Shown here: piece by piece, positions 29,262-54,583 of the stretch | Layout of the letters: each line of letters starts with the position of its first letter | How positions within the stretch are numbered: position 1 is the stretch's first letter | NCBI GenBank assembly: GCA_047495785.1 | Contig: JBLDXI010000017.1 | Span: 1,364,001 to 1,428,000 of the forward strand | From: Lepidodermella squamata | Taxonomy: Eukaryota > Animalia > Gastrotricha | Reading direction: 5' to 3' | Length of the DNA: 64,000 nucleotides | Program-made: the position numbers and the translations under genes | The notes under the pieces: model-generated | What the model was told of the DNA's origin: nothing | The model's database searches: none | Seen by the model: only the letters and a program-made list of their open reading frames with translations

Positions 29262-30721
29262 TTACTTGGCGAAGAGTGCTGCTTGAAGGCTTTGAAGCGA
29301 ATTTTGGAAAACGCCAAACGCTGCCGGAGAATTGGCGCCGTTGCCGCCGTTTTGTTGCGCAACCGCAGCGGCAGCCGCTAGTGACGATAGCAGAGGATTG
29401 CCGCCGGCCGAAGTGGGCGTTGTGAGAAGGCCCGCGAAAGGTGTAGATTGCGCGACGAGGTGAGAAAAGCCGGGCGCCGGGCCTTGCGGGCTGTTGCTCG
29501 CTGAACTTGTTGATTGTTGTGGCGAAACGAGGCCCGGGGTCGGGAAGGCTGCGTTGCCCTGGCCGATTTGACGCGCCAGCTCTTCCCAAATAGCTGATTG
29601 CTGTTGCTGTTGTTGCTGCTCTTCGAACGCGGCTTGATTTTGCATCTTCTGCTTCAGCGCCATGGCGAGGAGGAGATTCGGGTCGAACTGACCGAGTGAT
29701 TGTTGCGAGAGAAGCGAAGCCGCGGCCATGTTCAGAGCCGCTTGATCGGGAGATTCAGAATCGACTGACGAAAGCTGGCCGTAGTTATCAGCCTATAAAA
29801 TAGTAAGAAATTAGAAAATTGCATGAAAAAGTAATTTTTGATAATTTACCTGGCTATTAGGACGAGCTTTCTTTGAGCTCGGAGTTTCGGAATTGCCGTG
29901 AACTGGTGGGGTTTGACTTTGCAGCTGTTCGAAGCCTGACTGGGGAGCTGCGCGTTTTACGGCCTGCTTCTTCTGAGGCGCCTTCTGATCGCTGAGAATC
30001 GAGTCGATATCGAGAGGGCGTTTACGAACAGCGGGTGCTGATGACGAGCACGGGGTGGATGAACGTTGTTCGGCGGCGTCTTGGTCGGAAACGCTGAGAT
30101 CTTCCGAGGAAGCGACGCTCTGGTCATCGGGCGAGGAGCTCATCGGGTTGAAACCGGGCAGACCGGCGGCGCCCAAGCTGGCGAGGGCCGATAACTGCTC
30201 GGGGGTCATGGTGCTGAGAAACGAGGCGGCAGGCGGCATTGGGGCGCCGAGGCCAACCTGTCCGGGCATCATACCAGGTGCCTGCGGAAATTGACGACCT
30301 ATTATAACAAAAATTAGAAAAAATTCAAAAATTATTTTAATATTAACAAACCTGAAGGATTAGCAGCTGCAGCAATTGCTGAGAGATAGGCGTAAAACTG
30401 GGGGTTAGCGTACGGCCAGGTGAGGGCCATGCGTTGACGCTTGTCCTTCATGCGTCGGTTCTGGTACCAGACCTTGATAGTCGACTCGGTGAGGCCAAGC
30501 TGGGCGGCTAGTTCGCAGCGACGAGGCCGTGAAACGTAGTTCTCTCGGCTGAATTCAGCCTCGAGGCGCACGAGTTGTTCGCGGGTGAAGGCTGTACGGT
30601 AGCGCCTAATCGAATCTTCGTTGTTCGCGGCACTGCTAGACGAGCCGTTTCGGTTAGAATTCGCCGAAGACGAACCAGATCGTTGGCTGTTTTTCGATTC
30701 CATGTTAAGCTGCTCGGGCAT
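29262..30721 (-). CDS. evx: Even-skipped (Evx) homeobox transcription factor; exons 30721-30352, 30298-29850, 29792-29262
   Basis: Homeodomain [66 protein letters not shown] is diagnostic of Evx; phase-consistent GT-AG introns. Confidence 0.95.
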
Positions 30722-33211
30722 TGAAGTCGTTGTTGTTGTTGATTTAGAGTTAACAACTAAAGTCAGAGAATGATAATTTCTGAGAAATGGTTTTAAGGAA
30801 GTGATCAGGTAGGGATATATTTAAGCTAAATGAGGCGGAAATTAAAATGCGATCTACTTGAGACGACGATATCGCGCGCGGGCCCCGCTGTCGAGAGGCC
30901 GCAAAAACCGGCGCTATAACGACGTGCTAATGTCGTCGCTGTCACGCACTGATCGGAGGAACTGCGAAGGCCTGTGTTGTTGGCGGTGCCGCCGCAGCTG
31001 CGCACGCACGTTGACAAAAGGCGCGACTTTGCGTGTAATTTGCACCGAGTCGCGAGTCGTTCTGCAGCTCGAGGTAGCTCGAGATCAAAGAGCGCGCGCG
31101 CTCGCACGTTTTCGCAATATACATCCACCACAAGTACCAAAGGTTCGCAAATGACCCACAAATATATATTTATCGCATATAACGACAAATGATGACGTAA
31201 ATTACGCATGTGTTAAGGTAGATTCGAGTAGAAATTCCGCCAGATTTATTGCAACGCAACGGCTCGCGTGAAATCGAGCCATTATTTTAGCACATTCTTC
31301 CGAACACTCACGGCGCGCACGGCATCAAAGGCACTGACAGTGACCAAAGACACATCGTAAATACCGCCAATGAACTTTATGAGCTGGTCGTGATCGAAAC
31401 ACAATAGTCGGCACCTTTGCGGTACCATTATAAAATGATAACATTCTAACGCCTTGGAATTAGGTCGCATAAAACAGCTCGCAGATGCCTTAAAACTGTG
31501 ATAAAAATTATTATCTGCGATAGAGATCGCAAATTTTTACCTATGAAACGAAACTATATATAGTAGCGCATACTTGGAACCGGCTGGGAATGTGTTGAAA
31601 TCAAGTAGTAACGAGCGCGATTAAGATATACTAAAAGATTGCGTGGTCGATACATCTGCCCGGCGATTTTTGACTGCACGCAATCGCAATAAAGCCAGGG
31701 TGTGATAAATTGCCGGGGCCTTGGATCGTTTTTAACACATTGCGCAATTTTGATATATCTACGCCGGCTATTATCGTCATTATAATAATAAAGACTCAGA
31801 TAATCGCGCTGGATAAGGGCTAAACTATGGAGTCAAAACAGCTTATTCGGTGGTAACCTCAAGTGCCAAGTCAGTAGGAGGGTGTCTGACGCTAAATAAT
31901 ATAATTTCGACATCTGTTAGGATCAATTTCGAACGCGCACCGTGGGGCCGATCATTAATAATTTTTGCGATATCAGCAAAATGTTATTGGCGCGCTAATA
32001 AAGGACGCGCACTATTTCGCGCGAGGAGCGTACGGTTAATTTGCGCTTATGATTATTGCACCCTTCAGCACATCCGCACCGATTATGCCACCCGTGGGAG
32101 ATACAACGTTGCGAAAACCTAATCAACTCGTCATGATTTTCGATCGCGCTAAGCAATTACGCGGCACAGCAAGCGTCGAATCGCTCAATTTCTTACCGTC
32201 ACTTCTTCCTGAGATTATTATTGCTACACTTCCTGTGTTCAGGTACCGATGATGATCATCGGGGAGCAGTGCGCGCGCTGATCGAAAAACGCAACTTTTT
32301 ATTACGCGGGAACAAATTGCGCGCGCGCACACATAGCGCGCAAGGCACCGCCTCAAATTATCCGAGGCGTTGTAAATAAAAATCGCACCATAAAAAAGCG
32401 CGCTCAAGTAATTCGTTACGTGTTTACCTTTGGCCGCAGCGTTATTTTTCATCGGTTTGCTAGTATCACTCGCGTTGTTGTTGTTCGAGGTGTAACTCGA
32501 TTGGCTGGTGCCTACCGAGTTCTGTTCCAGCGCTGCAGATGATTGCCACAAATTTGACGCGGATAAAAACGCAGAGACGTCAAATCTTTGCTCCATAATT
32601 AATTCAATCAACTAATGAAAAACGTAGCAAGATGATGGGGAATAACGATATGGCGACTAATATACTTTTTTGACGTTTTTTGTTGACTCAATGATACGTA
32701 TCAGTCTGCGGCACTATGATATTATTATGTGAAGTGGTGGTGTTGTTGGTCTGGAAAATTTTAGCGACACTTAGCTATAATTATTGCGAAGTTGAAATGA
32801 CACGGCGATGACACCCTGCAGTTGGCCAATGAGCGCAAAGGTTATATAGTACAATAACGGCGCTTTTATTACCGCAGGTATCAATTTGTAAACACATGTT
32901 GAAATAACTCCAATTATTTTGTAAGTTCTACTAATTCCACTATTATAAAAGGTAACACAAACAAAACAATAACAACAATAACAGCAGCAATTAAACACGA
33001 GTATAATGTTTCGCCGCGATTTTACTATATGCTTTTGCGTTGAAATTTGAATATTAGTCATAATACCTCTTAATATGATCTGCCGTAAGAGGTTGACGCC
33101 ATTATACTTAACTACTTGTTAATAGTATTATCATGACAGGAAAACACGCCGACCGACACGGTGTGATAACGGCTCGTAGTTTTCAATTGCGGCCGCCTTA
33201 ATGGTTTAATC

Positions 33212-33212
<1 letters not shown>

Positions 33213-33252
<40 letters not shown>
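33213..33252. repeat. (TC)20 microsatellite upstream of evx
   Basis: Perfect dinucleotide run. Confidence 0.95.
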
Positions 33253-33255
<3 letters not shown>

Positions 33256-35533
33256 TTGGCGCTCTCACTTTGCTCTCGTAGAATTATTGTTTTATTAGCA
33301 GCCACAAACCAGTGATGGCGCCAACAACGTGTAATTTACGTTATTAAATGTAATTTATCGCATCATCGCTAATGGGGACCCGAGCGCGCTCTCTGACTAT
33401 TGTAGGGTGACACGAACTTGTGCGCGCGCGCTCATTTTTATTGCTCGCGCGCGCATCGGCTTGGCAACGAGAGAGAAAAAAGTTTAATGTCTGACGCGCA
33501 CCTCCAATTTCAACATTCATCCATCACGTTAATAATCGGCCTTGATGGGCAATTTAGCTCACTTGAAATATGTATATATCAACGTTAAATATTATTAATT
33601 TATAATAGAGCCGCCGCGCTATATGATAAAACGTTGGCTCTGCAGATCATGCGGCTATTAAGTTGAGGTTTTGTTGTTGTTTTTATTTTGTTGTTAATGT
33701 GTAGGTGATACATTTAACGATATAATAAACGCCGCTTTTAACATGCGTGTATCATTATATCAGCGAGCTGAATCTCGCGAACAGGTAAAAAACGCATTAT
33801 GATGGCACCAATTCGCGACTACTATAAGATAATGCGCGTGCGCGGCAATGGCGATGATGAGGCGTAATAGCGCGGCCAGCAACGCGACGAGGCGACAAAT
33901 AAACGGCGCGCTTTTTAATAAAGAAGAGATGGGCTGATAGGTAGTTAGGTAAAATATCTGGCGACAAATTGCCACTCTCAGAAGATAGACGCGCGCGCGC
34001 AATTTTAATGGCTTTTATTACCCCCTATTAGAGGATAAATTACTCGGCTTTATAGATTAAAAGACGTTATTATTAAGATATAAGCCGCTTGGTGACAAAT
34101 TTGACTAATGGCCGTGCCCGAGGATTATCTCTCTAAATTTATAGGTAAAGTATATCGCCGCATTAAAAAGCCCATTATGAAGGTTGAAAAAAGCGGCTAA
34201 ATATCGACATCTCCCTAAAAAAAATAGTTGTGATGTAATCGAGATAACGTGTAACGCCGCGTTTTTTGCCATCTGATAGCTCATTGGTCTGCCTCCAGCC
34301 AATGAGAGGGCGCGCACTATATTTTTATGGGCTGAATCATGATGATACACTTTGGCGCGTTCTTTTCACGCAGAATAATAATCAGTATATGATTTTTCGG
34401 CACGCGTCGACAACGGCTGGTGGCGTATTAAAATCAGAGCGGGGCAATAATATCGACAATAATTTTAATAATTCACCCACCACCAGCTTGGGGAATTTTT
34501 CCGGGCGTAAATTGATTATAATTAAGTTAATGATTTTAACAAAAAGGTGTCAAGCATTCGTGATCGCGTGCATTAACACGTTCGGCACTTGTCGCCGACT
34601 CACTGATATCATGCGTTTTATTGCACGCCATATTTTGAGGCGATGATTTTCAGCAGCGGCAATAAATTACGCGTGAATTATCATCTTTCCTTTTGATGTT
34701 ACACGCAATGATTAACACTGTTAGTATTATTATTATTATCATCGAAGTCTGCTCGCCCCCCACTCGCCTGCCGCTCGCGCCTCAGTTCGCTTGAATTTTC
34801 GAAATTTTATTGCTGAATTATTATTAGTCTCTATTATTATGGCGATAATAATTTTGATATTGATAGAAGCCGCCTCCAATAAAATAATAGGCGTTATATT
34901 ATCGCTTTTATTCACTGTCATAAAAAGTGTCTCAACTTAGTGGCGGCCGACCAGTGCGCGATATCATCTGGTAAAAATCATTAGACCGTATCGCGCGCTA
35001 TAAACTTTGAACGGGTGTTGCAGTTTTACGTTCTCATCGCCAAGGTAGAAGTTTTAGTACACCCTGTGGCTAAATGGCGAGACAAGCGTCTTGCCGGTAT
35101 AATAATTTATTGCTCATAAAACGAGCGTTTCTCACGTGAGCGGAGACCGGACGAAACCAATTACAATCATTTCTTTGAGATGATGGCATCCGAGTCGGCA
35201 TAATATAATGATTGCTGTTTTATAGGCGGTGAACCAGTTTTCGTTCGGAGAAATAAAAACTCGGAAAATATTCAGCACTTGATTCAAGTTTTATTCGTTC
35301 TTGATAGTGTTGGCTAGGTCTACATATTCACTTAGACTAGAATACTTGGTATAAAAAAAGCTGCAGGGCGATTTTTCAAAAATACGTAAATCGAGTAAAT
35401 CATTTTACTGTCATTATCATTTCACGAGGAAATGCACTCCTTTCAATATCGACGTGTACCTATAAGATAAAGGCAATTTCGTTACGTTTCGATTCAATAT
35501 TGAAACAATCTTACCCTCGCGAATCAAATATAT

Positions 35534-36445
35534 TTATTCAGAGGTGTCGAATTCCGGGGAATATTCGCTCTCCTCTTCATCTTGACGCTCATCTGTAAAT
35601 CGGAAAAAATGAAAGGAAAAATGGATTAAAATGTTAATATATACCGAAGGATTCATCCTCATCTTCACGGGCCTCTGTTCGATGATGGTAAGTTTCAGTG
35701 TGTGACAATTGAGTTGGAAAAATGCAAAAGGTTACCAAGGGTCACCTCCTCAGCTTGGGTAGCTTCTGTTCATTAACCATTTTAACGATCTTGGTAATTT
35801 TTAGGCAATTGAAACAAACCGTATTCATCTTCGTCCTCGCGCTCTTCTATACATGAACAATTAAATTATTTTTTTTTGCATTATTTTTATATTATCTTAC
35901 CGACTGAATATTCATCGTCGTCCTCGCGCTCAACTGCAAAGCAAAAAATTATGAATTCAACTCAAGAGGTACTTGAGAGGACTTACCGATCTCGTCTGTG
36001 AGTTCATTTTTTTGATGAAAAATGATATATTATTCACTGTTAATTATACTATAAAAAATGTGTACCATCACCAGTCTCGTCCTGGCGTTCATCTGGTAAT
36101 AATTCAAGGGTTATTTTGGAAAGCGCTAAGTTTTAGAAGTCACATACCAATATCATCTTCATCCTGACGCTCCTCTGGAAAAAAGAGGACATTTAATCCA
36201 AATAATACTCGGAATATACGAGAAAATACCAAGCTGAACAGTGTAGATTGGCTGTTCATCCTCATCCTGACGCTCAGTAACGTCATTAGCAACGTCATTG
36301 GCGACGTCATCGGCTGCAAACATCAAAATTGGTTTAGCAATACATTTTCAAAAATTCTATATTTACTGGTTTCGTAGGTTTCCTCGTAAACTGGCGCCGA
36401 TCGGGCGACGACGAAGATAACGGCAAGGATAATGGCGACCTTCAT
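35534..36445 (-). CDS. Secreted acidic repeat protein (134 aa) from a microexon gene; exons 36445-36367, 36313-36230, 36174-36148, 36092-36066, 35995-35987, 35933-35901, 35846-35820, 35765-35736, 35674-35645, 35592-35534
   Basis: Signal peptide MKVAIILAVIFVVARSA; ten exons with GT-AG introns of 52-70 nt, all phase 1; repeated xER(Q/E)DEDE units; TATA-like TATAAA ~100 nt upstream of the ATG. Absent from the ORF track. Confidence 0.85.
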
Positions 36446-36857
36446 AGTTTTCGTTGAAAAACTTGGCTAACCGGGACTGGAAAAAATTACTTCCTGAAAA
36501 CAAAATGAACCGAATGAATCGAAAATAGCGGCTGTTTTTGTTTTTATACCCGCTAATTTTTCGCTATTTTTTATCGCCTGTGACAAACTGAGTGTTTCAG
36601 TTCCAGCCCGCGTGACGCTATATCAAGTTTCTGGGAAATCGGCCCGCTGTCGCGTCGCCACGCCGCTCACCTGGGCGACGCACGATAATTCGTGTTCAAC
36701 TCGATAAAACACTTGCAAAAAACACACGGCAAAAAATGGTGCAGGCGTCAATTTCCCACTTTATTCGCGCTATACCTGGTAATTTTTCAGCATATTGTTA
36801 TTTTACCACCGAGAGCAAGCCAACAAATTATCAGTGTCAAAACAGGATCTTTGCAGC

Positions 36858-37684
36858 TTACATCGAGTTAAGATGGACCTTCTTGACGTGGTGCTTTTTC
36901 GGTTTTTCTGGAATTGGGAAAATTGATAAATTGTTGCTTGAATATAGCAGTTATATTTACCTTCAACATCCTCTTGAGGCTCCTCGTTTTCGCCCTCTGC
37001 GTCCGCACTCTCATCCTGGCGAGTCGGGCGGCGACCAGCTCGAGCCGGTGCAACATCCTCACGGCTATCTTGGGGCAAGCGGTCGTGGTAAGGGCTGCGG
37101 GTAGGCGGTGGTCGTCGGGTAACGCGCCTGGTCACATCGCCACGGCGGTCTTGAGCTAGGCGGTCGTGGTTCGGGCTGCGGGTTGGCGCCGGTTTCCGGT
37201 TTACCCGCTCAACTGCACGGCGAGCTACCTCTTGTTCCTCATCTTCATCTTCACTTTCATTGCTGGGTTCTGCGGGAAATTCCAGAATCCAGCTTAAGAT
37301 TAGAGATTAAATTAAAAATAGTTACCCTGCTCTTCTTCTTCCTCTTCATCCTCGTCTTCCTCATGGTGATGCCGCTTGGCTGGTTGAAGCTCACGTTTAG
37401 CCTGGTTTTCCGCTATACAAAAAATCGATAAAATTAGGTGGGGATAAAATGAAATAGATCTCACCCTCTTCGCCCTCCTCCGAGCTCGGCTCGTCGTCGA
37501 ATGGTTGTTTGTGATGATTGGGTGATCTGGTTACAGGTGGGCGACGGGTCGGTCTTACCGGTCTACGGTCGACAGCCGCCTCCTTGCTCGCAGTAGAATC
37601 ATCCTCTACGGGTCGAAGAGACCTAGCCTCAACGAAAACAGCGACCATCAAGATCGCAACAGTGAGAAATAGAATAACTCTCAT
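36858..37684 (-). CDS. Secreted Arg/Pro/His- and Glu/Asp-block protein (221 aa); exons 37684-37465, 37412-37326, 37269-36961, 36907-36858
   Basis: Signal peptide MRVILFLTVAILMVAVFVEA; three R(R/K)PxxTRSP(N/Y)H repeats, KR/RR dibasic sites, poly-Glu runs; all introns phase 1; ATATAAA upstream. Confidence 0.85.
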
Positions 37685-38201: not shown

Positions 38202-38957
38202 TCACTTGACAAAAATTTTAATAGCGATAACACCGCCTAGTATGAGCAGTTCGGCAACAATAATTCCGATTAGGAGCATTTTGCTCTGAAGGACATTGCA
38301 CCGAAGACGCTGAATAATTCTCGTGCTTAGCGAAAGTTCAGCATTTGTGTCATTCAACCGCTCTCGAGTTCTTTCCAGCTTCTCGCGTTGCAGACCTAGC
38401 TCTGCCGCGGTATCAACACCGATTTGTTCGGTTTCTAGGGCCAGATGATGGGTCCGATGCAGAGTGGCGCTGCCTTGTTCAAGGATCTGAGTGCCGAGTT
38501 GCAATTGACGTTGAACGGAATCATCAACAGCGGCTCGGTTTCGGAATTCTTGCTCGGCTGCAACGTTCGATTGCCATCTTTGCGTGCCGGTAGTTGATCG
38601 ATATCGATTCTGAAGGTGAAGAAACAGTCAAATAAACTCTCGGGACACTGCAGTTTCAACTCACAAGTTCAGCGTAGATTTGATCGCGTTCACGTCGAAG
38701 TTGTCGAGCGTCGTTCAGGAAACGCGGCTCCAGACGAGCACGCTCTTCAATGCCGGAAATCTATACAGAAAATGTAACTTCTTAAAATCATTTATATCAA
38801 ATTCGGAACATACGATGAAGTCTAGTTCTTCAACATCCTCCTCGATTCCGCGGATGATTGTGCTCCGTTGTTCAGCAGTTTTAACATTGATTAGTTCAGC
38901 GAATTTCCCGGCAATGCGCTGCGCAACTTGCCTGAATTCTGCATCCAACGACGTCAT
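38202..38957 (-). CDS. VTI1: Vti1-family Qb-SNARE (Vti1b-like); exons 38957-38814, 38760-38665, 38609-38202
   Basis: SNARE motif LALETEQIGVDTAAELGLQREKLERTRERLNDTNAELSLSTRIIQRL, C-terminal TM anchor, N-terminal helical region. Confidence 0.85.
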
Positions 38958-40392: not shown

Positions 40393-43300
40393 TCAGACAG
40401 TAGTTTGAATGGCTGTGCTAACTATTTTCTCCAGACGTTTGAAGAAAATTAAGGTATTTTTTACAATTCTATTGTCAGCACTAAGCAGCCTTGCAGGGTC
40501 GTGGCCAGCAACAGATAAACAGTCGTAAGAAATATGGTAGGCTAACTGGCTCAGAGGAGTAACGTTACCACAGAACATACATGTAACATCATCAATTCTG
40601 AAAATAAAATGTTCGATACGGCGAAAGACGGTGTTCGTGACGACTCGCAGAGCAGTACTTCTAAGGTCAGGTGGATAATTTTCGAATATCTTACTAATGC
40701 CAAAGTAACCGTCCCTGGCTAATAGGTAGCTGGCATTATATTTATTATGAAATTTGACAGATAGTTCAGAAACATAGCAGTCTTTGACTAGGTTGAAAAA
40801 TTGCTCCATGACTGCCGGGTCACGCATAAACCAGAAGTCGGGAGGCAGATTGTAGGATAATAGAAATTTACGAATTGCGTGGATGGGATTTAAGACACCC
40901 ATCTTCGGACGAGAATGGAAGTAAAAAGAAAAAGCATCATTCACTAAGGGGTTGGCACATTTCGTCAGCTCACATGTAAACTTGACTGCATTGAGTTTCG
41001 CCTTTAGGCTAGGGGGAATAAGTCCCATAACAAAACCAGTTGATAAACTAGACGCATTGTACGGAATGTCGCGCGCTCTTTTATAATACTTATAACAGAC
41101 GCTGTCCAATTTAGCAACACGGCTAGGGGCGAAGAGGCCCCAGAGTTCGGAGCCTGCAAGCATCGCCGCTTCAATTTTGCTACAAAATAGTGTATCCAAG
41201 TTATTGCGTTCTATCATACTCAATTTGATCCTATGAGAGGAAAGAGCGTTGTAACAGCTATTGCCACGTGTAAGCGCATTTTCAATAGCTTCAAACCAGC
41301 TCAAGTCGCTGGATATCGGTACGCCTAGGTAGAAATCAGATTTTACAACTTTGAGAGGTACGCCGTTCATATTAAAGGAGTAACGGTCAGGTGAAACAGG
41401 AGCTTGGGAAAAAATGATAACTTTCGTTTTACCGGGGTTAGGGCTGAGCCCTTCTCTAGTAGAATACGTCGACATAGCATCAATCTGTATTTGCAAATCC
41501 ACCGCGTTAGTTGCAGTGGGTGTGGAGTCGTCCGCATATAATACGCAAAGTACCTTGGTAGAAAGTAACTTGGGAATGTCTGATAGATTTTTGGCATTCT
41601 CAGCCAGATGAAGAGGCAAATCGGCGGTATACAGATTGTACATTAGGGGACCTAAGACGTCACCCTGTCTAACACCGCGTTCAATGGCGATGTCTGCAAT
41701 AGACAGTTTGCTGCCAACTCGCACTTTGGCTTTAGCATCGGAATAGAGAGAGTTCAATCTCTTGGCAAAGGAAGATGAGATACCTAATCGCTGGCATTTC
41801 CATATAAGACGGTTGTGAGGAACGCAGTCGAAAGCTTTAGTAAAGTCGATTAAACATATAAAGAGCATTCTACCGCGAACGTGGATTTGGTACGTCGCCA
41901 ACGACTGAAGGACGAAAGCCGCGTGTAAGCGCGATAATCCTTTTTCGAAACCAAACTGCTCTTCAGGTATGATCGAGTGAATTCTACACCACTTTTCCAG
42001 TCTCAATTTCAGTATAGTAGAATAAGTTTTGTATATTACGGATAAAAGAGATAATGGCCGGTAGTTGTCCGGCTTAGAGGAGTCACCTTTTTTGAACAAG
42101 GTGCAAAACAGAGACAAATTTAGTCCCGATGGCAGGGTGTAGCTAAGGAAACACGGTTCAAAAATTTTAAAGAGCGTCTTGCTGAAAAAAGAAACATTCA
42201 GGTCACTGTGTTGCATGAATTCAGCTGTAATACCATCCGGGCCGGGCGCCTTACCTGCTTTTTGAAGTTCTATGGCCATTTTGACTTCGTCAATAGTCAA
42301 AGGAGCATCCAGTATTGGGTCTGATGTTGTGAGTTCGAGTGGGGGTGAGACAACATTCCGATTTCGGTAGAGCTCCCCGAAAAATTCGACCCATTCGTGC
42401 ATCTGCGGTTGATTTTGGGGAGAAAGAGGCGCTGTTTTGAAAGCCACCCAGAGAGAACGTTTAGTTTTATCGCTGTTGATTACTGATATTTCCTTGTTAC
42501 GATTTAATATGCGGCGCATTTTGCGCGAGGCGTTAGCTTGTTTTCTGTATAAACAAAAATTCACATGATCCCCGACATCCGGGCGGGTCGAGTCGGCCTC
42601 GATAATTTTAGTATCATAAGGGATGTGGCCTCTAGTGGCAAAATTACTGATAAGATCTAGCGTAGAGCGCAAAGCATCGTTAGGCATTTGAGGTAAGTTA
42701 TCCGCAAATGAGTCGATGTCAGTATTTAAAAGGTGATTATGGAACGCACCTGAATCGAAGTGCACCTTAGTATAAGACGTGGAAGCGCTAGTCTGCTTAA
42801 ATGTGATCTCATCTGATTTCAAATAGTATGCTATGGGAAAGTGGTCAGAGTTAATGATATCCTGGCGAACAGAAAAAGTTGAGAATTTGCTCGCCAGCAA
42901 ATCTGGAGGAAGGAGACAGTAATCGATCACGGATTGACCGTTGTGACCAACAAAGGTGAATTCGCCTTGACGGTCGCCACTGCAGCGACCATTCGCGACA
43001 TAACAGGACATATGATTACACATAGAGAAAAAATGTTTGACCACGCTAGAGGTGGATACACTAGTGTCCTTGGATCTGCGAGGCGCTAGTGGGTAGAAAG
43101 CTTCGTCATCAGTTAAGGTTTCCGACTGATTGCCTATTCTTATGTTGAAGTCTCCGACTAACAAAGGAACGTCATAAGTCGATGAATAAGTGTCATGTAA
43201 ACTAGTTATTTTTTCTAAAACTTGAATTTGACTGGTAGCCGAGTATGGTCGATTATAGACGATAAAGAGTCCCATGATGGTATTCACGCCACGTAACAAT

Positions 43301-43596
43301 TTTGCCTGGACTCTAACTAGAATTATCGATTCATTAGAGAAAAGTAAGGATGGTTTCAAGTCTTTACGAATAGCGACGGTCATGCCGCCACTAATACTTT
43401 TGGTATTGATGTCACGAACAGGAGGGGCGGAGAATATTGCGTAACCAGATATAGACTTTGGTTCCGTACCGAAGGTTTCGACCAAGGCAAAGATTAAGAA
43501 TTGTTTCAGGGTTTTCATGTGGTTTTCAGCTTTAAGACCCGAATGAATGTTCCAAAACAAAATAGAAAAGTTCCAGTCACTAGATTTCAGCAAAAC
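40393..43596 (-). CDS. LINE ORF2: AP endonuclease + reverse transcriptase + C-terminal Cys/His motif
   Basis: APE motifs FWNIH, LVET, VYNRP, GDFN, IDY, SDHFPI; RT motifs KAPGPDG, NYRPLSLL, QFGF, IDFTKAFD, GVRQGDVLGP, YADD, YLG; CMFC..HISYDC. Confidence 0.95.
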   Translation of the reverse strand, partial: VLLKSSDWNFSILFWNIHSGLKAENHMKTLKQFLIFALVETFGTEPKSISGYAIFSAPPVRDINTKSISGGMTVAIRKDLKPSLLFSNESIILVRVQAKLLRGVNTIMGLFIVYNRPYSATSQIQVLEKITSLHDTYSSTYDVPLLVGDFNIRIGNQSETLTDDEAFYPLAPRRSKDTSVSTSSVVKHFFSMCNHMSCYVANGRCSGDRQGEFTFVGHNGQSVIDYCLLPPDLLASKFSTFSVRQDIINSDHFPIAYYLKSDEITFKQTSASTSYTKVHFDSGAFHNHLLNTDIDSFADNLPQMPNDALRSTLDLISNFATRGHIPYDTKIIEADSTRPDVGDHVNFCLYRKQANASRKMRRILNRNKEISVINSDKTKRSLWVAFKTAPLSPQNQPQMHEWVEFFGELYRNRNVVSPPLELTTSDPILDAPLTIDEVKMAIELQKAGKAPGPDGITAEFMQHSDLNVSFFSKTLFKIFEPCFLSYTLPSGLNLSLFCTLFKKGDSSKPDNYRPLSLLSVIYKTYSTILKLRLEKWCRIHSIIPEEQFGFEKGLSRLHAAFVLQSLATYQIHVRGRMLFICLIDFTKAFDCVPHNRLIWKCQRLGISSSFAKRLNSLYSDAKAKVRVGSKLSIADIAIERGVRQGDVLGPLMYNLYTADLPLHLAENAKNLSDIPKLLSTKVLCVLYADDSTPTATNAVDLQIQIDAMSTYSTREGLSPNPGKTKVIIFSQAPVSPDRYSFNMNGVPLKVVKSDFYLGVPISSDLSWFEAIENALTRGNSCYNALSSHRIKLSMIERNNLDTLFCSKIEAAMLAGSELWGLFAPSRVAKLDSVCYKYYKRARDIPYNASSLSTGFVMGLIPPSLKAKLNAVKFTCELTKCANPLVNDAFSFYFHSRPKMGVLNPIHAIRKFLLSYNLPPDFWFMRDPAVMEQFFNLVKDCYVSELSVKFHNKYNASYLLARDGYFGISKIFENYPPDLRSTALRVVTNTVFRRIEHFIFRIDDVTCMFCGNVTPLSQLAYHISYDCLSVAGHDPARLLSADNRIVKNTLIFFKRLEKIVSTAIQTTV

Positions 43597-44625
43597 CTAT
43601 TGCGACATTTCATTACCTGGTGCCCGCCATGGGGGAACATGGTTCTCGGCCGGGCCCGTAGCAGGCACGATCAATCCTGTAACAAAGCAATATTGATAGT
43701 TACCAAGATTGGTGAACAGCCGGTTTGCCACAATGTCCGCGTACGTAAGTGCTGCATTGTGTTGCTCCATCAGAGATTTCTTCTTGGCTGCGAGGGCAGC
43801 ACGAGTGGATCTCTCCATTGGTCCTTTGGAAGGGTAGACTTTGAGCCCACCCAATGCTAGCTTGGGGAAGGATGAGCGATCGAGTATTTTGCGCCGATTG
43901 TCGTCAGACAACTTGGTGTAACACACAACTGTAGCTGTTGGGCGAGTTTGGCCTTGTCGCGGGGGGAGATGAATAACTTTTTCCACGACGTCCGATGTTA
44001 GAGCGTTTTTGATATCTTCGTCAATCGCCAGGGCTTTCACCTGATCGATAAAGTCCGTAGGGGAGGTAGCGCCCAATCCAGACACAAATAGGCTGTCAAC
44101 TTGTTGGTGATCTTCTTTTTCGCGTGTGATGGCCAGGCCGCAGAGTCTGTTGACAGCAGTTTTGAGCATGGCATTCTCTTGTGAGACCAGCTGTAACTCA
44201 TTATTCATGTTTGCGAATTGCTTCGCATTCTCCGTCTTGAGCTCATTATAGCGGGCCTCAGATTGCTCCAGCTTGGCGTTCAATTTTTCAAATTCCGCGA
44301 GGAAAAGTTTAACAAGGGTTGACAACGAGCTACTGAGGTTGGCTTGTAATTCTACAGCCCACTGTGGCGCATCAGAAGAGAGCGGTTTTTTCGTGTTTTT
44401 GCCACCGCCGCCACGATAGTCTACATCGTTGGGGTTAACGGGGCTCAGCTCATCGATTGAGCGGGTGTTTTTATTGCGCATTAATGAATCCATAAATCGA
44501 GGCGTTGACGCCAATAGATACGGGTCTACGTTAGCATTGACTAAAGTTACTGGCAAGTTCTGCCTACTGCCATTAAGCAGGTTTTGAATAAAGCTTACAT
44601 CAGCTAAATTCTTCGCTTCTCCCAT
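43597..44625 (-). CDS. LINE ORF1 (coiled-coil, probable nucleic-acid chaperone)
   Basis: 342-aa ORF directly upstream of ORF2 with a heptad coiled coil (LNAKLEQSEARYNELKTENAK..LVSQENAMLK) and a downstream LFVSGL segment. Confidence 0.8.
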   Translation of the reverse strand: MGEAKNLADVSFIQNLLNGSRQNLPVTLVNANVDPYLLASTPRFMDSLMRNKNTRSIDELSPVNPNDVDYRGGGGKNTKKPLSSDAPQWAVELQANLSSSLSTLVKLFLAEFEKLNAKLEQSEARYNELKTENAKQFANMNNELQLVSQENAMLKTAVNRLCGLAITREKEDHQQVDSLFVSGLGATSPTDFIDQVKALAIDEDIKNALTSDVVEKVIHLPPRQGQTRPTATVVCYTKLSDDNRRKILDRSSFPKLALGGLKVYPSKGPMERSTRAALAAKKKSLMEQHNAALTYADIVANRLFTNLGNYQYCFVTGLIVPATGPAENHVPPWRAPGNEMSQ

Positions 44626-50044: not shown

Positions 50045-53000
50045 ATGGCGGAAGTTGCAGCCAATGCGCAGCCCCAAAAGGCGTTTGATCCTGCTGGTAA
50101 GTCGTCAGCAGTATTTAAGTTACCGATAGCTTTATTCCTTTCTTTTTCAGATTTCCTCCCGATCGAAATTCCTCCTGCACCTGTCGGTTTAGGTGGAAAA
50201 GAAGGGCAGGGCCCTCGTCTAGTCATCAAATCATTGATTTTGGAAAACTTCAAGTCCTACGCCGGTAAGCACGAGATCGGCCCTTTCCACAAAAAGTTCT
50301 CCACCGTTGTCGGCCCGAATGGAAGTGGCAAATCGAACATTATCGATGCGCTACTATTCGTCTTCGGATACCGTGCAGCTCGTATGCGCCAGAAAAAAAT
50401 CAATAAGCTCATCCACAGCTCGGAGAATTGCCAAGACCTCGACCAAGCCTCTGTTACTGTCCGTTTCGAAAAAATCGTCGACACGGGCCCGGGCGGTAAT
50501 GACTTTACAGTTGTTCAGGGCTCGGCTTTCGACATTCGCCGCACTGTATACGCCGATGGCTCGTCAACTTACCATCTCGATGAAAAGAAAGCAACTCATC
50601 GCGATATCTGCGACATGTTACGCTCGTATGGCATCGATTTAGACCACAATCGCTTCCTCATTCTTCAGGGCGAGGTCGAGCAGATCGCGATGATGAAGCC
50701 GAAAGCGCCTACTGAAAACGACGATGGAATGCTGGAATTTCTCGAAGATATCATCGGAACCTCGCGGTTTAAATCAGTTCTAGAGACGCTGGAAGAACGA
50801 ATTCGTGTCCTCAATCACTTCCGCTCGGAAAAATTGTACCGCGTCAAGTTGATTGAACAGGAGAAGAATTCGTTAGCAGCTGTTAAAGATGAAGCTTTAG
50901 AGTGGATTGAGAAAAGCAACACTCTGGTTTTACGCCGCAACGCTCACCTCCAGAAAGTCATCCAACGCTACACGCATGAAGAAAACCAGCTTAACCAGCA
51001 GAAAGAAACGATTGTGAACTCGAAGCAAGCTCGTGAAACCGAGCTGAAAAAGGTGAAAACTGAAAAGAAGGAAAAAGATCGTCTGTTGGCCGAGTTCGTT
51101 AGTCGTGAGGAAACTTTACGAAAAGCTCTTGAAGCTCGTAAGAAGCAATTTGCTGATTGCGAGGCTCGCGACGCTAAATTGCAGCAAGACATCAAACACG
51201 CAAGTTCAAAAATCTTGAAGCTTGAAAAGCAACTCGCGTCTGAGGAGAAAAATCTCGCCGATCTCAACAAAGCCGCTGCCTCGAAATCAGCGAGCGATCC
51301 TAAAGATGCTGAGGCCGCGCTGAAGGAAGAAATCTCGAAGATTCAACAGAAAATTAAAGCTCTCGACGAGGAGAAGAACGAATTGGAGGAAAAAATCTCG
51401 AAGGCCCGCGACGCTTTGAAGCCTGAAACCGAAGCCCTACGAGCTGAGAAGAAGAAAAAAGACGGCGAGTTGGCTAAAGTTCGTAAATTGGCCGACGAAG
51501 CGAAAGCTCAGGTGAAACTGGCGCAGAATGAGGTTGATACAGTTAAATCAGCTCAATCTCGCGAGTCGGAGAAACTGAGCAAAATCGCCGGGCAACTTGA
51601 ATCGGCGAAAAATCGCCACGAAGAACTGAAGCGTGACGTTGCGTCGGCGACAGCTCGCGGTAAAGAAATAACGAAGGAACACGAAAATTTGACGCAAGAG
51701 ATTGCACAAGCTGCGGAAAAAGCGTCAAAACTAGTAGATTCAATCAACCAAGACCGGCGAAAATTGGCCGAATGTCGAGATGCGCAACAAGCAGCTGGTA
51801 CTCGCAATCGCGTTCTCGGTTTCTTACTCGAGCAAAAGCAGAAGGGTGTCGTGCCGGGTGTTATCGGGCGACTGGGTGATTTAGGCTGGATTGATCCGAA
51901 ATACGACATTGCCGTTTCAACCGCTTGCAGCCCTCTCGACTCAATCGTCGTAGATACAGTTGAAACCGCAACGGCTTGCATTGATTTGATCCGGAAAAAC
52001 AACATTGGTTTCGGTAATTTCCTCGCCCTGGATAAGGTGACTAACAAGGCTGGTCAAGCGATGCGCCACAAATTCCCTGGCGCGCCTGAGAAAGTCCCTC
52101 GGCTGTTCGATTTGATCAAAGTTAACGATGAATCTCTCCTCCCGGTTTTCTACCACGGTCTTCGCGATACGTTGGTTGCGGATAATATCGAACAGGCCAC
52201 CCGAGTTGCGTACGGCAGTACGCGTTACCGTGTTGTCACCCTGAATGGGCAGTTGATCGAAACCTCCGGAACAATGAGCGGTGGCGGTAATCGGCCATCG
52301 CGAGGCCGGATGGCGCTGTCAGAGGCTAACACGGTTTCGACTAATAAACGGAAATCAGTTGGCGGGGATGATGTCGACATTCCGAAAATCGAACAGGCGA
52401 TTCAAGCCGCTCAGAACGAGGTGGGCACTTTAAATCGGCGCCGTCTGGAAGGCACCGAGCGAATTCATACGTTGGAGGTTGAGATCAAGGAATGCATGAA
52501 GAAGGTCGAGAAGGCCAAGTCTGAACTCGCGTCTTTGGAGAAATCCATCCCGCAACTCGAGCAGAACGCCCAGGAACAGGAGAAGACTGTCTCAGCCGCT
52601 GCCCCGGATTCGAAACGAGTCGCTGAGCTCGAGGCGGTTGTTGCGAAGAAGCAAAAAGAGGCTGATAAAGCCCTGGATGTTGTGAAAAAGGCTCAGGAGG
52701 AACTGGCCGAGGTTGAAGAACGTCTCGGGGCGATTAGTGGCGCTAAGTTGAAGCCAATGGTCGATAGAATGGAGCATTGCCAGTCGGAGATCGATCGTTT
52801 GAAGAATGAAATCACGACGAAACGATCAGCGGCGAAACAAGCGGAGAAAAATTTGCAAAGAACTACTGAACGAGTGGCGGAATTGCGCGAGCAGTTGGAC
52901 GAAGCTCGGGAGTCGAAGGCGAAATTGCTGGAAGATTGCAAGGCGCTGGAGACTGAAGCTCAAGAGGCGATTAATGCCCACGACGAGGTGAAGAAGGATT

Positions 53001-54583
53001 TGAAGAAAATCGACGCTGATAAGGGGGACGTGTCTGATGCGTTCAAAAAATTGGCGGCTGATGAGACGTCGGCACAAAAGGACATTTTAGGCTGGCAACA
53101 GCAGTTGGAAGAGCTTGAGGAGCGAATCAAGGCGAATCGATCTGGGTTGAAGCGATTCCGGCGTGATTTGGCTGGTTTGGCGTTGCAACCGGCCGATGGT
53201 GGTACGGGAGGCGATGAGGAAAAAGAAGCCGTAGATGAACCTAAATTGCCGACTTTGAGTGAAGATCAGCTCGAGGAGATCGATGAAGAGGCTATTTCGG
53301 TCGAAATCGCGAGGTTGGAAGAAGAAATTGGCCAGAAACAGCCGAATATCGAAGCTATTCAAGAATACCGTAGAAAAGTGAGTTTATTCAATATATTTTC
53401 TTAGTGAAACCACCGAATCCAAAATACAGGCTAAAAATTGCTGAAGCACGCGACTGGGCTGATTTTCTATCATCTTGGCATGTTATTTATTGAAAATTGG
53501 AATAACCGGGAAAATGAGGCTCGGCCTAAGCTAAGATGCTGGAAAATCTATCGAATCGCTTGCTTTTAGTATAGAAAATAGCGTTATTGTGGATTCGGCT
53601 TTTCCACTAAGTTCCATTAGAAAATTTGATTTTAAAATAAAATATAAAATATAAAAAAATATGTAATATTTAAAATAATTTTTACAGGAAAAACTGTATT
53701 TGCAACGGGTGGCTGAACTCGAGGAGTTGACCGAGTGCCGTGAGAAGCAGCGCCAACAGCTTGAAACCATCCGCCGTACCCGCTTGCAAGAGTTCCAAAG
53801 CGGTTTCGGTATAATTACTGCCCACGTTCGAGAAATCTATCACATGATCACCGGTGGTGGTGATGCCGAACTTGAATCTGTCGATCAGATGGACCCGTTC
53901 AGCGACGGCATCTCTTTCCAGTAAGATTTTCAGTTAATTCCAGAATTTAAGATCTTTCTTGTTATTTTGACTAAAAATAACGTTTTAACAACAACACTAC
54001 AAGCTACAAGCTAGAAATGATAAAATTTGAATTTTATTGCAATTATTTTTATTATTTTGAAATTTTAAAATAATATTTTATAAAAATTAAAAAAATCAAA
54101 ATTGTTTTTTAAATATTTTAATTATTTTCATACTCAATTTTACGATCATTTACTAATCGAATTTTCTTTTTCAGCGTCCGCCCTCCAAATAAATCGTGGA
54201 AAAGCATCACAAATTTGTCTGGCGGTGAGAAGACATTAAGCTCCCTGGCCCTCATTTTCGCGCTGCACATTTTCCGCCCGGCGCCGTTCTACATAATGGA
54301 CGAAATCGACGCGGCCCTCGATGCTCGCAACGTTGGCATCATCGCCATCTACCTGACTGAGCGGACGAGCAACGCGCAGTTCATCGTTATCTCGCTGCGT
54401 AATGAAATGTTCGAACTCGCCGACCGTATGATCGGCATCTACAAGACGCACAACTGTTCGAAATTCGTCGTTTTCGACCCGTCCGCCATGGCAGCGGCCG
54501 CCGGCGCCCTGCCCAGCCAAATGCAGCAGCAAGCCGCGATCACCGACGGCCCTGTCGACGATTCGCAGCGCACTCATCGCTGA
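50045..54583 (+). CDS. SMC4: Condensin subunit SMC4; exons 50045-50096, 50151-53377, 53688-53920, 54175-54583
   Basis: NFKSYAG, Walker A GPNGSGKS, IDLDHNRFLILQGEVEQIAMMKPK, hinge GRLGDLG..YDIAVSTAC, signature LSGGEKTLSSLAL, Walker B YIMDEIDAALD, AQFIVISLRNEMFE. Confidence 0.97.

What the first reader, a model, noticed from the sequence alone, without database searches (positions are those of the whole stretch)
35534..36445. Microexon gene: symmetric phase-1 cassettes, most encoding one acidic repeat of a secreted peptide precursor
Seen: internal exons of 84, 27, 27, 9, 33, 27, 30 and 30 nt, all multiples of 3 and all phase 1, so any subset can be skipped in frame. Product after the signal peptide: ..VTERQDEDEQPIYTVQL-EERQDEDDI-DERQDETGD-DEI-VEREDDDEYSV-EEREDEDEY-EATQAEEVTL-EAREDEDESF-DERQDEEESEYSPEFDTSE. 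Known: this is the design of schistosome micro-exon genes (MEGs), which diversify secreted proteins by exon skipping. Inference: an independent or undescribed MEG-like diversification system, invisible to ORF scanning.
Basis: partly seen in the sequence, partly recalled or inferred. Interest (0 to 1): 0.85.

Follow-up and report, generated by a model that had tools for sequence, protein, structure and literature searches.

The report
Micro-exon gene for acidic secreted repeats
A small invertebrate, probably a gastrotrich, has a hidden ten-exon gene for a secreted, very acidic protein in which most tiny exons are old copies of one repeat; the layout resembles schistosome micro-exon genes, but exon duplication alone explains it and nothing here shows exons being skipped to make variants.

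Summary
The gene model holds. All nine introns are GT-AG, phase 1 and 52-70 nt. The product is 134 aa: a signal-like leader, then a 42% acidic chain with no Lys or Cys. Its seven arginines all sit in [E/A]-R-[Q/E]-D. Seven units are homologous (pS 0.86, pN 0.14) while the introns have diverged, so they are old exon duplicates under selection. The 9-nt exon looks like a trimmed copy.

The gene meets a published operational definition of a micro-exon gene. It lacks the long introns and motifs of schistosome MEGs, and the host is not a neodermatan. Symmetry is expected from duplication alone, and tiny introns disfavour skipping.

Best reading: a secreted multi-unit acidic precursor, probably cut at single arginines, spliced mostly in order. 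No relatives were found, but the searches were exon-wise and weak. The scan has noted similar micro-exon and acidic-peptide genes elsewhere in this genome.

The parts
36542..36548 (-). TATA-like box (TATAAAA), with an initiator-like TCATT at 36517-36513
   Evidence: read from sequence; function inferred
36367..36445 (-). E1, 79 nt: ATG, hydrophobic signal-like leader and start of an acidic segment; ends in phase 1
   Evidence: hydropathy up to 3.8 over the leader; no signal-peptide predictor run
36230..36313 (-). E2, 84 nt: two 12-nt DVAN repeats, then the first ER-QD unit
36148..36174 (-). E3, 27-nt repeat micro-exon (ERQD unit)
36066..36092 (-). E4, 27-nt repeat micro-exon; possible second in-frame donor at 36071 (21-nt form)
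35996..36007 (-). decayed 5' part of a former full-length repeat exon, now the end of intron 4
   Evidence: 36007-35987 matches E4 at 15 of 21 nt, reached in 1 of 5000 shuffles; AA stands where sister exons have AG
35987..35995 (-). E5, 9-nt micro-exon; weak acceptor, strongest donor of the gene
35901..35933 (-). E6, 33-nt repeat micro-exon (ERED unit with Tyr)
35820..35846 (-). E7, 27-nt repeat micro-exon (ERED unit with Tyr)
35736..35765 (-). E8, 30-nt diverged micro-exon without the Arg
35645..35674 (-). E9, 30-nt repeat micro-exon (ARED unit)
35534..35592 (-). E10, 59 nt: last ERQD unit and stop codon
35533..35538 (-). AATAAA polyadenylation-like signal overlapping the stop codon
   Evidence: read from sequence
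36858..37684 (-). upstream neighbour and possible paralog: four-exon gene (220, 87, 309, 50 nt; all introns phase 1) for a 221-aa secreted protein with alternating acidic and Arg/Pro-rich blocks
   Evidence: leader exons similar (segment-wise shuffle p about 0.002), DNA similarity not significant (z 1.7)

Best explanation
A real, lineage-specific gene for a secreted, disordered, strongly acidic precursor. It grew by repeated tandem duplication of one phase-1 exon with its intron. Each copy begins just before a single arginine and carries the acidic unit after it. The ~53-nt introns are removed mostly in order, giving one main 134-aa form. After signal removal the chain is probably cut after the seven arginines. 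That would release short polyanionic peptides, four starting with Gln (possible pyroglutamate) and several with Tyr amid acidic residues (possible sulfation), acting as a gland secretion by charge: binding cations or neutralising a basic partner. Shown from sequence: exon structure, repeat homology, selection on the motif, composition. Inferred: transcription, secretion, cleavage, modification, role, and low skipping.
For: Top ab initio parse. TATA, initiator and poly(A) signals in place. Seven homologous units, invariant at codon positions 1-2 of R, D and the flanking acids while third positions vary; pS 0.86 vs pN 0.14. Introns unalignable except one pair, so the copies are old. All 7 arginines after the leader share one context, and there is no Lys or Cys. 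That context fits the Arg-plus-Glu PQM/iPQM processing motifs of spider precursors (PMC8290080), as a resemblance only. Consecutive symmetric exons in disordered proteins often arise by tandem duplication (PMC3632108). 22 of 26 reference introns are 49-62 nt and none is 63-146 nt.
Against: No RNA or peptide data. No dibasic sites, so classical prohormone convertase cleavage is not signalled and a single-Arg protease is assumed. The units share little beyond acidity, unlike typical neuropeptide copies. The pS/pN comparison uses non-independent pairs and a core chosen for its conservation. Several splice sites score below the training range (training scores are inflated in-sample), which could allow skipping.
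Confidence: 0.5

Rival explanations
1. Same gene, spliced in order, but the product stays uncut: a polyanionic matrix, cuticle, mucus or adhesive-system protein that binds calcium or a basic protein, like SCPP/casein-type proteins built from small symmetric exons. The ER-QD motif would be a binding or modification site, not a cut site.
For: 42% D+E, no Cys, no dibasic site. Caseins and SCPPs are acidic secreted proteins built by exon duplication (PMC12470106; PMC3632108). A small negatively charged releasing factor is proposed for flatworm duo-gland adhesion (PMC6410801), and the neighbour gene has Arg-rich blocks.
Against: A single Arg is strictly kept in every repeat of an otherwise acidic chain, which fits a processing site. 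Only one S-x-E motif is present. The same flatworm paper found releasing vesicles poor in protein.
Confidence: 0.27
2. A convergent MEG-like system: internal exons are skipped in many combinations, and because each exon is roughly one cleavage site plus one peptide, splicing sets the peptide mixture or the charge and length of the secreted chain.
For: All 8 internal exons are symmetric, and the operational MEG definition is met. Exon and repeat borders nearly coincide. Acceptors of E5, E9 and E10 and several donors are weak, and weak sites go with skipping. E5 stayed a multiple of 3 after its apparent acceptor shift. E4 has a second in-frame donor. The genome does splice introns of 147-823 nt.
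Against: Symmetry is forced by duplication. E5 had to stay in frame even if always included. Introns are minimal, not MEG-like. The host is not a neodermatan and is probably free-living, so immune evasion is not a motive. An unchecked scan note reports another micro-exon run of this genome joined in order in RNA (s1-411471).
Confidence: 0.15
3. A decaying or silent gene, or a partly wrong model (E5 not used, introns retained).
For: No homolog found. E5 and E8 are degenerate and some acceptors are weak. No expression data.
Against: Intact frame, promoter-like and poly(A) signals, a strong synonymous excess, and all 18 splice dinucleotides at modal spacing. Retention of any intron gives a stop or a frameshift.
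Confidence: 0.08

Closest known systems
Schistosome and tapeworm micro-exon genes (MEGs)
   Same: Signal peptide, a run of very short exons with lengths divisible by 3, larger flanking exons; meets the operational definition used for Hymenolepis (PMC7653826).
   Different: Introns 52-70 nt, not 0.1-5 kb. Exons are homologous acidic repeats. No MEG N-terminal hydrophobic/aromatic motif or Cys motifs. Host outside Neodermata. Isoform diversity not shown.
SCPP / casein genes (e.g. CSN1S1, CSN1S2, AMBN)
   Same: Acidic, disordered, secreted proteins encoded by many small symmetric exons made by exon duplication; skipping occurs in caseins (PMC12470106).
   Different: SCPP introns are phase 0 (own knowledge) and their motif is S-x-E phosphorylation. 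Here the phase is 1 and the motif is E-R-[QE]-D. No sequence relationship; invertebrate host.
Multi-copy peptide precursors cut at single Arg (spider PQM/iPQM precursors)
   Same: Arg with Glu at -1 and acidic residues after it in every unit; signal peptide and acidic pro-segment.
   Different: In spiders the anionic pieces are linkers between cationic peptides; here every piece is anionic. No PQM protease was looked for, and cleavage is untested.
Other acidic repeat precursors noted by this scan in the same genome (s1-398090, s1-398128, s1-407519)
   Same: Secreted, acidic, Tyr- or QD-containing repeat units with basic separators.
   Different: Those are described as near-identical repeats in large exons, mostly with KR or RR sites. 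This gene has diverged units, one per exon, with a single Arg. The notes are unchecked.

Membership tests
MEG (operational architecture, PMC7653826) | at least 7 exons | tested here: met
   10 coding exons
MEG (operational architecture, PMC7653826) | [quoted passage not shown] | tested here: met
   7 of 10
MEG (operational architecture, PMC7653826) | run of at least 4 consecutive micro-exons | tested here: met
   E3-E9, seven in a row
Schistosome MEG superfamily | N-terminal signal peptide | tested here: inconclusive
   basic residue, hydrophobic core (hydropathy to 3.8) and small residues after it; no predictor available
Schistosome MEG superfamily | most of the coding region in very small symmetric exons | tested here: inconclusive
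   45% of coding nt in exons of 36 nt or less; 66% in all symmetric internal exons
Schistosome MEG superfamily | long introns, 0.1-5 kb | tested here: not met
   52-70 nt against the range given in bioRxiv 10.1101/2023.06.21.545858
Schistosome MEG superfamily | hydrophobic/aromatic motif after the signal peptide, or Cys motifs of the red clade | tested here: not met
   motifs; the product has no Cys or Trp and is acidic right after the leader
Schistosome MEG superfamily | host is a parasitic platyhelminth | tested here: not met
   window SMC4 lies outside the 100%-supported neodermatan clade in a quick tree; its own placement is long-branched and unsure
Schistosome MEG superfamily | protein variants made by exon skipping | not testable with these tools
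Multi-copy peptide precursor | dibasic convertase sites | tested here: not met
   no KR, RR or KK, and no Lys after the leader
Multi-copy peptide precursor | recurrent conserved single-Arg site between units | tested here: met
   7 of 7 mature arginines in [E/A]-R-[Q/E]-D; the Arg codon varies only synonymously
Multi-copy peptide precursor | peptides released in vivo | not testable with these tools
   needs peptidomics
SCPP / casein family | repeated S-x-E motifs and phase-0 introns | tested here: not met
   one S-x-E motif, all introns phase 1; the phase-0 rule is own knowledge

The most novel reading that the evidence does not exclude
An independently evolved micro-exon diversification system in a free-living animal with minimal introns, in which each exon is one protease site plus one peptide, so that exon skipping sets which acidic peptides are secreted. 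Other symmetric micro-exon genes noted in this genome could form a wider class.
Probability: 0.13. Interest if true: 0.75.

Novelty: new variant of a known kind. Interest (0 to 1): 0.4.

Why it matters
MEG architecture has been described as apparently restricted to platyhelminths (PMC4350168) and linked to immune evasion. A gene that meets the architectural definition in a probably free-living, short-intron animal suggests the layout can arise from plain exon duplication. That gives a control for the claim that symmetry exists for skipping, and one junction-read experiment decides it. The gene is also an orphan secreted polyanion that ORF scans miss, and a candidate for gland, adhesion-release or peptide signalling roles. 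If it is spliced constitutively, it is a tidy but modest case of a duplicated-exon repeat protein.

Tried and rejected

Joined search:, the joined spliced protein was not sent to any search tool; that step is left out. Searches were by exon reference, and junction codons were read as X in scripts.

Homolog searches:
- E2 plus three intron-derived codons (30 aa) against 1.84 billion representatives gave 0 hits. A simulation shows this finds a self match (E 8e-8) but few relatives below 80% identity, so the blank is weak.
- E2 alone was too short for the search for related loci. The natural 55-aa ORF around it gave one spurious bacterial match, to a membrane-protein-like ORF and partly in intron-derived letters.
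- Pfam had nothing for E1, E2 or the neighbour's exons. Atlas gave no usable hit. The neighbour's exon 3 found nothing.
- Exons E3-E10 are below all minimum query sizes and were not searched.

Synteny: L001 keeps Vti1, SMC4 and Fem-1 together but has other genes and a telomere after Vti1, and no micro-exon chain. L002 ends 19 codons into a signal-like leader. The Vti1 scan of JGI metagenomes was empty.

Other dead ends: a regex histogram of intron lengths was uninformative. The original MEG paper is not held. The bacterial promoter scan is irrelevant here. No structure prediction was run for an acidic, low-complexity chain.

Rejected: chance parse, satellite DNA, and schistosome MEG family membership.

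Full report
CONTEXT. The window is from a compact animal genome, about 42% GC. It carries a PHD-finger gene, a homeobox gene, a Vti1-type SNARE and a LINE (Pfam), SMC4, and ORFs I read as even-skipped-like, Claspin-like, Fem-1-like and a dynein light chain (own reading). Of 26 introns picked by hand from these conserved genes, 22 are 49-62 nt (median 53) and the rest are 147-823 nt. SMC4 has no close named relative: about 60% to molluscs and 82% to one metagenome protein over the head region. In a quick tree it pairs with that protein and lies outside the neodermatan flatworms (long branches, careful search unfinished). An earlier scan note says probably a gastrotrich. The scan reports 1991 windows on 147 pieces. 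With a step of about 62 kb, suggested by the offset in that output, this is about 123 Mb, which fits the Lepidodermella squamata assembly of 122 Mb, 157 contigs and 43% GC (PMC11660948). The identity is an inference, not a test.

OBSERVATION. The ten coding exons lie on the minus strand exactly as described. All nine introns are GT-AG, phase 1, AT-rich and 52-70 nt. I trained splice matrices, an intron-length model and exon/intron composition on the 26 independent introns. Without any frame rule the parser recovers 7 of 10 exons exactly. A scan for chains of symmetric small exons finds 8 here, at most 3 elsewhere in the window, at most 4 in 30 shuffled windows and at most 6 in 1500 local shuffles; its thresholds were chosen with the gene in view. 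A TATA-like box, an initiator-like element and an AATAAA over the stop frame the gene. The gene is very probably real, though no RNA was seen.

ANATOMY. The product is 134 aa with a hydrophobic leader. After it come 118 residues, 42% Asp or Glu, with 7 Arg, 6 Tyr and no Lys, Cys or Trp (junction codons left as X). All seven arginines stand in [E/A]-R-[Q/E]-D followed by an acidic residue. The tail of E2 and exons E3, E4, E6, E7, E9 and E10 align at 12-18 of 21 nt, with the splice sites in register. First and second codon positions of the core are almost invariant while third positions vary: pS 0.86, pN 0.14 (pairs not independent, core chosen by conservation). The introns no longer align, apart from introns 7 and 8 (z 3.6). 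So the units are old tandem duplicates of one exon whose protein motif is kept by selection.

E8 is a diverged unit without the Arg. The 9-nt E5 looks like the 3' remnant of a full unit. The 21 nt from 36007 match E4 at 15 positions (1 of 5000 shuffles), with AA where sister exons have AG, and the present acceptor lies 12 nt downstream, in frame. An assembly error or a mostly skipped exon is not excluded.

NEIGHBOUR. Directly upstream lies a four-exon gene (37684-36858) for a 221-aa secreted protein with acidic and Arg/Pro-rich blocks and one RQDE motif. Its three introns are also all phase 1, around exons of 87 and 309 nt. The leader exons resemble each other (p about 0.002 in a segment-wise shuffle; DNA not significant), so the two may be paralogs. 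A relative has a signal-like leader at the same distance behind Vti1 (551 vs 518 nt). All-phase-1 structure here is therefore not tied to micro-exons.

HOW IT WORKS. The best reading is a secreted multi-unit acidic precursor, spliced mostly in order and probably cut after its single arginines into polyanionic peptides. The site resembles the Arg-plus-Glu PQM and inverted PQM motifs of spider precursors (PMC8290080). Four pieces would begin with Gln, and several Tyr residues sit among acidic residues; from general knowledge these are pyroglutamate and sulfation contexts. Cleavage, modification and role are inferred. The main rival is an uncut polyanion of the casein or SCPP type. A role in adhesion release is speculative: a small negatively charged factor is proposed in Macrostomum, whose releasing vesicles are however poor in protein (PMC6410801).

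IS IT A DIVERSIFICATION SYSTEM? In favour: every internal exon can be dropped in frame, exon and unit borders nearly coincide, and several splice sites are weak. Against: a duplicated exon has to be symmetric, and consecutive symmetric exons in disordered proteins often come from tandem duplication (PMC3632108). [quoted passage not shown] Here the introns are at the genome minimum, and a skip needs a 132-192 nt intron, a size class that is rare in my small sample. I put regulated, substantial skipping at about 15%.

COMPARISON. The gene meets the operational MEG definition used for tapeworms: at least 7 exons, half of them micro-exons, a run of 4 (PMC7653826). It is built like a MEG. It is not a member of the schistosome superfamily: introns are 52-70 nt instead of 0.1-5 kb, the described motifs are absent, and the host is not a neodermatan. 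MEGs were described as apparently restricted to platyhelminths (PMC4350168). My paper search found no report in a free-living non-flatworm, within a limited library.

RELATIVES. None found, but the evidence is weak. The one usable exon query detects little below 80% identity. Syntenic loci lack the gene or end too early.

VERDICT. Observation confirmed; interpretation partly supported. A real orphan micro-exon gene for an acidic secreted repeat protein: a new variant of a known architecture, one of several such genes that this scan has noted in this genome, with the exciting part (skipping) untested. Interest 0.40.

Noticed in passing
window 36858-37684 (-): Orphan four-exon secreted protein gene with repeated RRPP..RSP.H blocks alternating with acidic runs and His clusters, all introns phase 1; possible paralog or basic partner of the micro-exon gene. 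No Pfam, Atlas or homolog hit.
   Followed up: partly
window 36494-36477 and 37723 (-): Strong acceptor-like sites lie between the TATA-like box and the ATG of both secreted genes without an obvious upstream donor; they may be trans-splice acceptors, as the scan notes a spliced-leader-like RNA in this genome.
   Followed up: no
window 38202-38950 (-): Vti1-type SNARE gene; in L001 it sits about 2 kb from SMC4, whereas here about 11 kb with a LINE lie between them.
   Followed up: partly
window 40393-44625 (-): Apparently intact LINE: 342-aa ORF1 followed by a 1066-aa endonuclease/reverse transcriptase ORF.
   Followed up: no
window 30721-35500: About 4.8 kb without clear genes upstream of the even-skipped-like homeobox gene, rich in TAAT and GCGCGC words and with a TC microsatellite; probably regulatory DNA.
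   Followed up: no
L001 1-47 and 465-1463: The related contig ends in a TTAGGG telomere array about 3 kb from Vti1, preceded by two similar small secreted Cys-containing genes and a 227-aa unknown ORF.
   Followed up: no
L002 1047-1103: TATA-like element and a signal-like leader at the same distance behind Vti1 as the window's neighbour gene; the contig ends there.
   Followed up: partly
window 50045-53404 (+): The listed 1119-aa SMC4 ORF reads through a 54-nt in-frame intron (50097-50150); similar stop-free in-frame introns occur in the Fem-1 ORF.
   Followed up: partly
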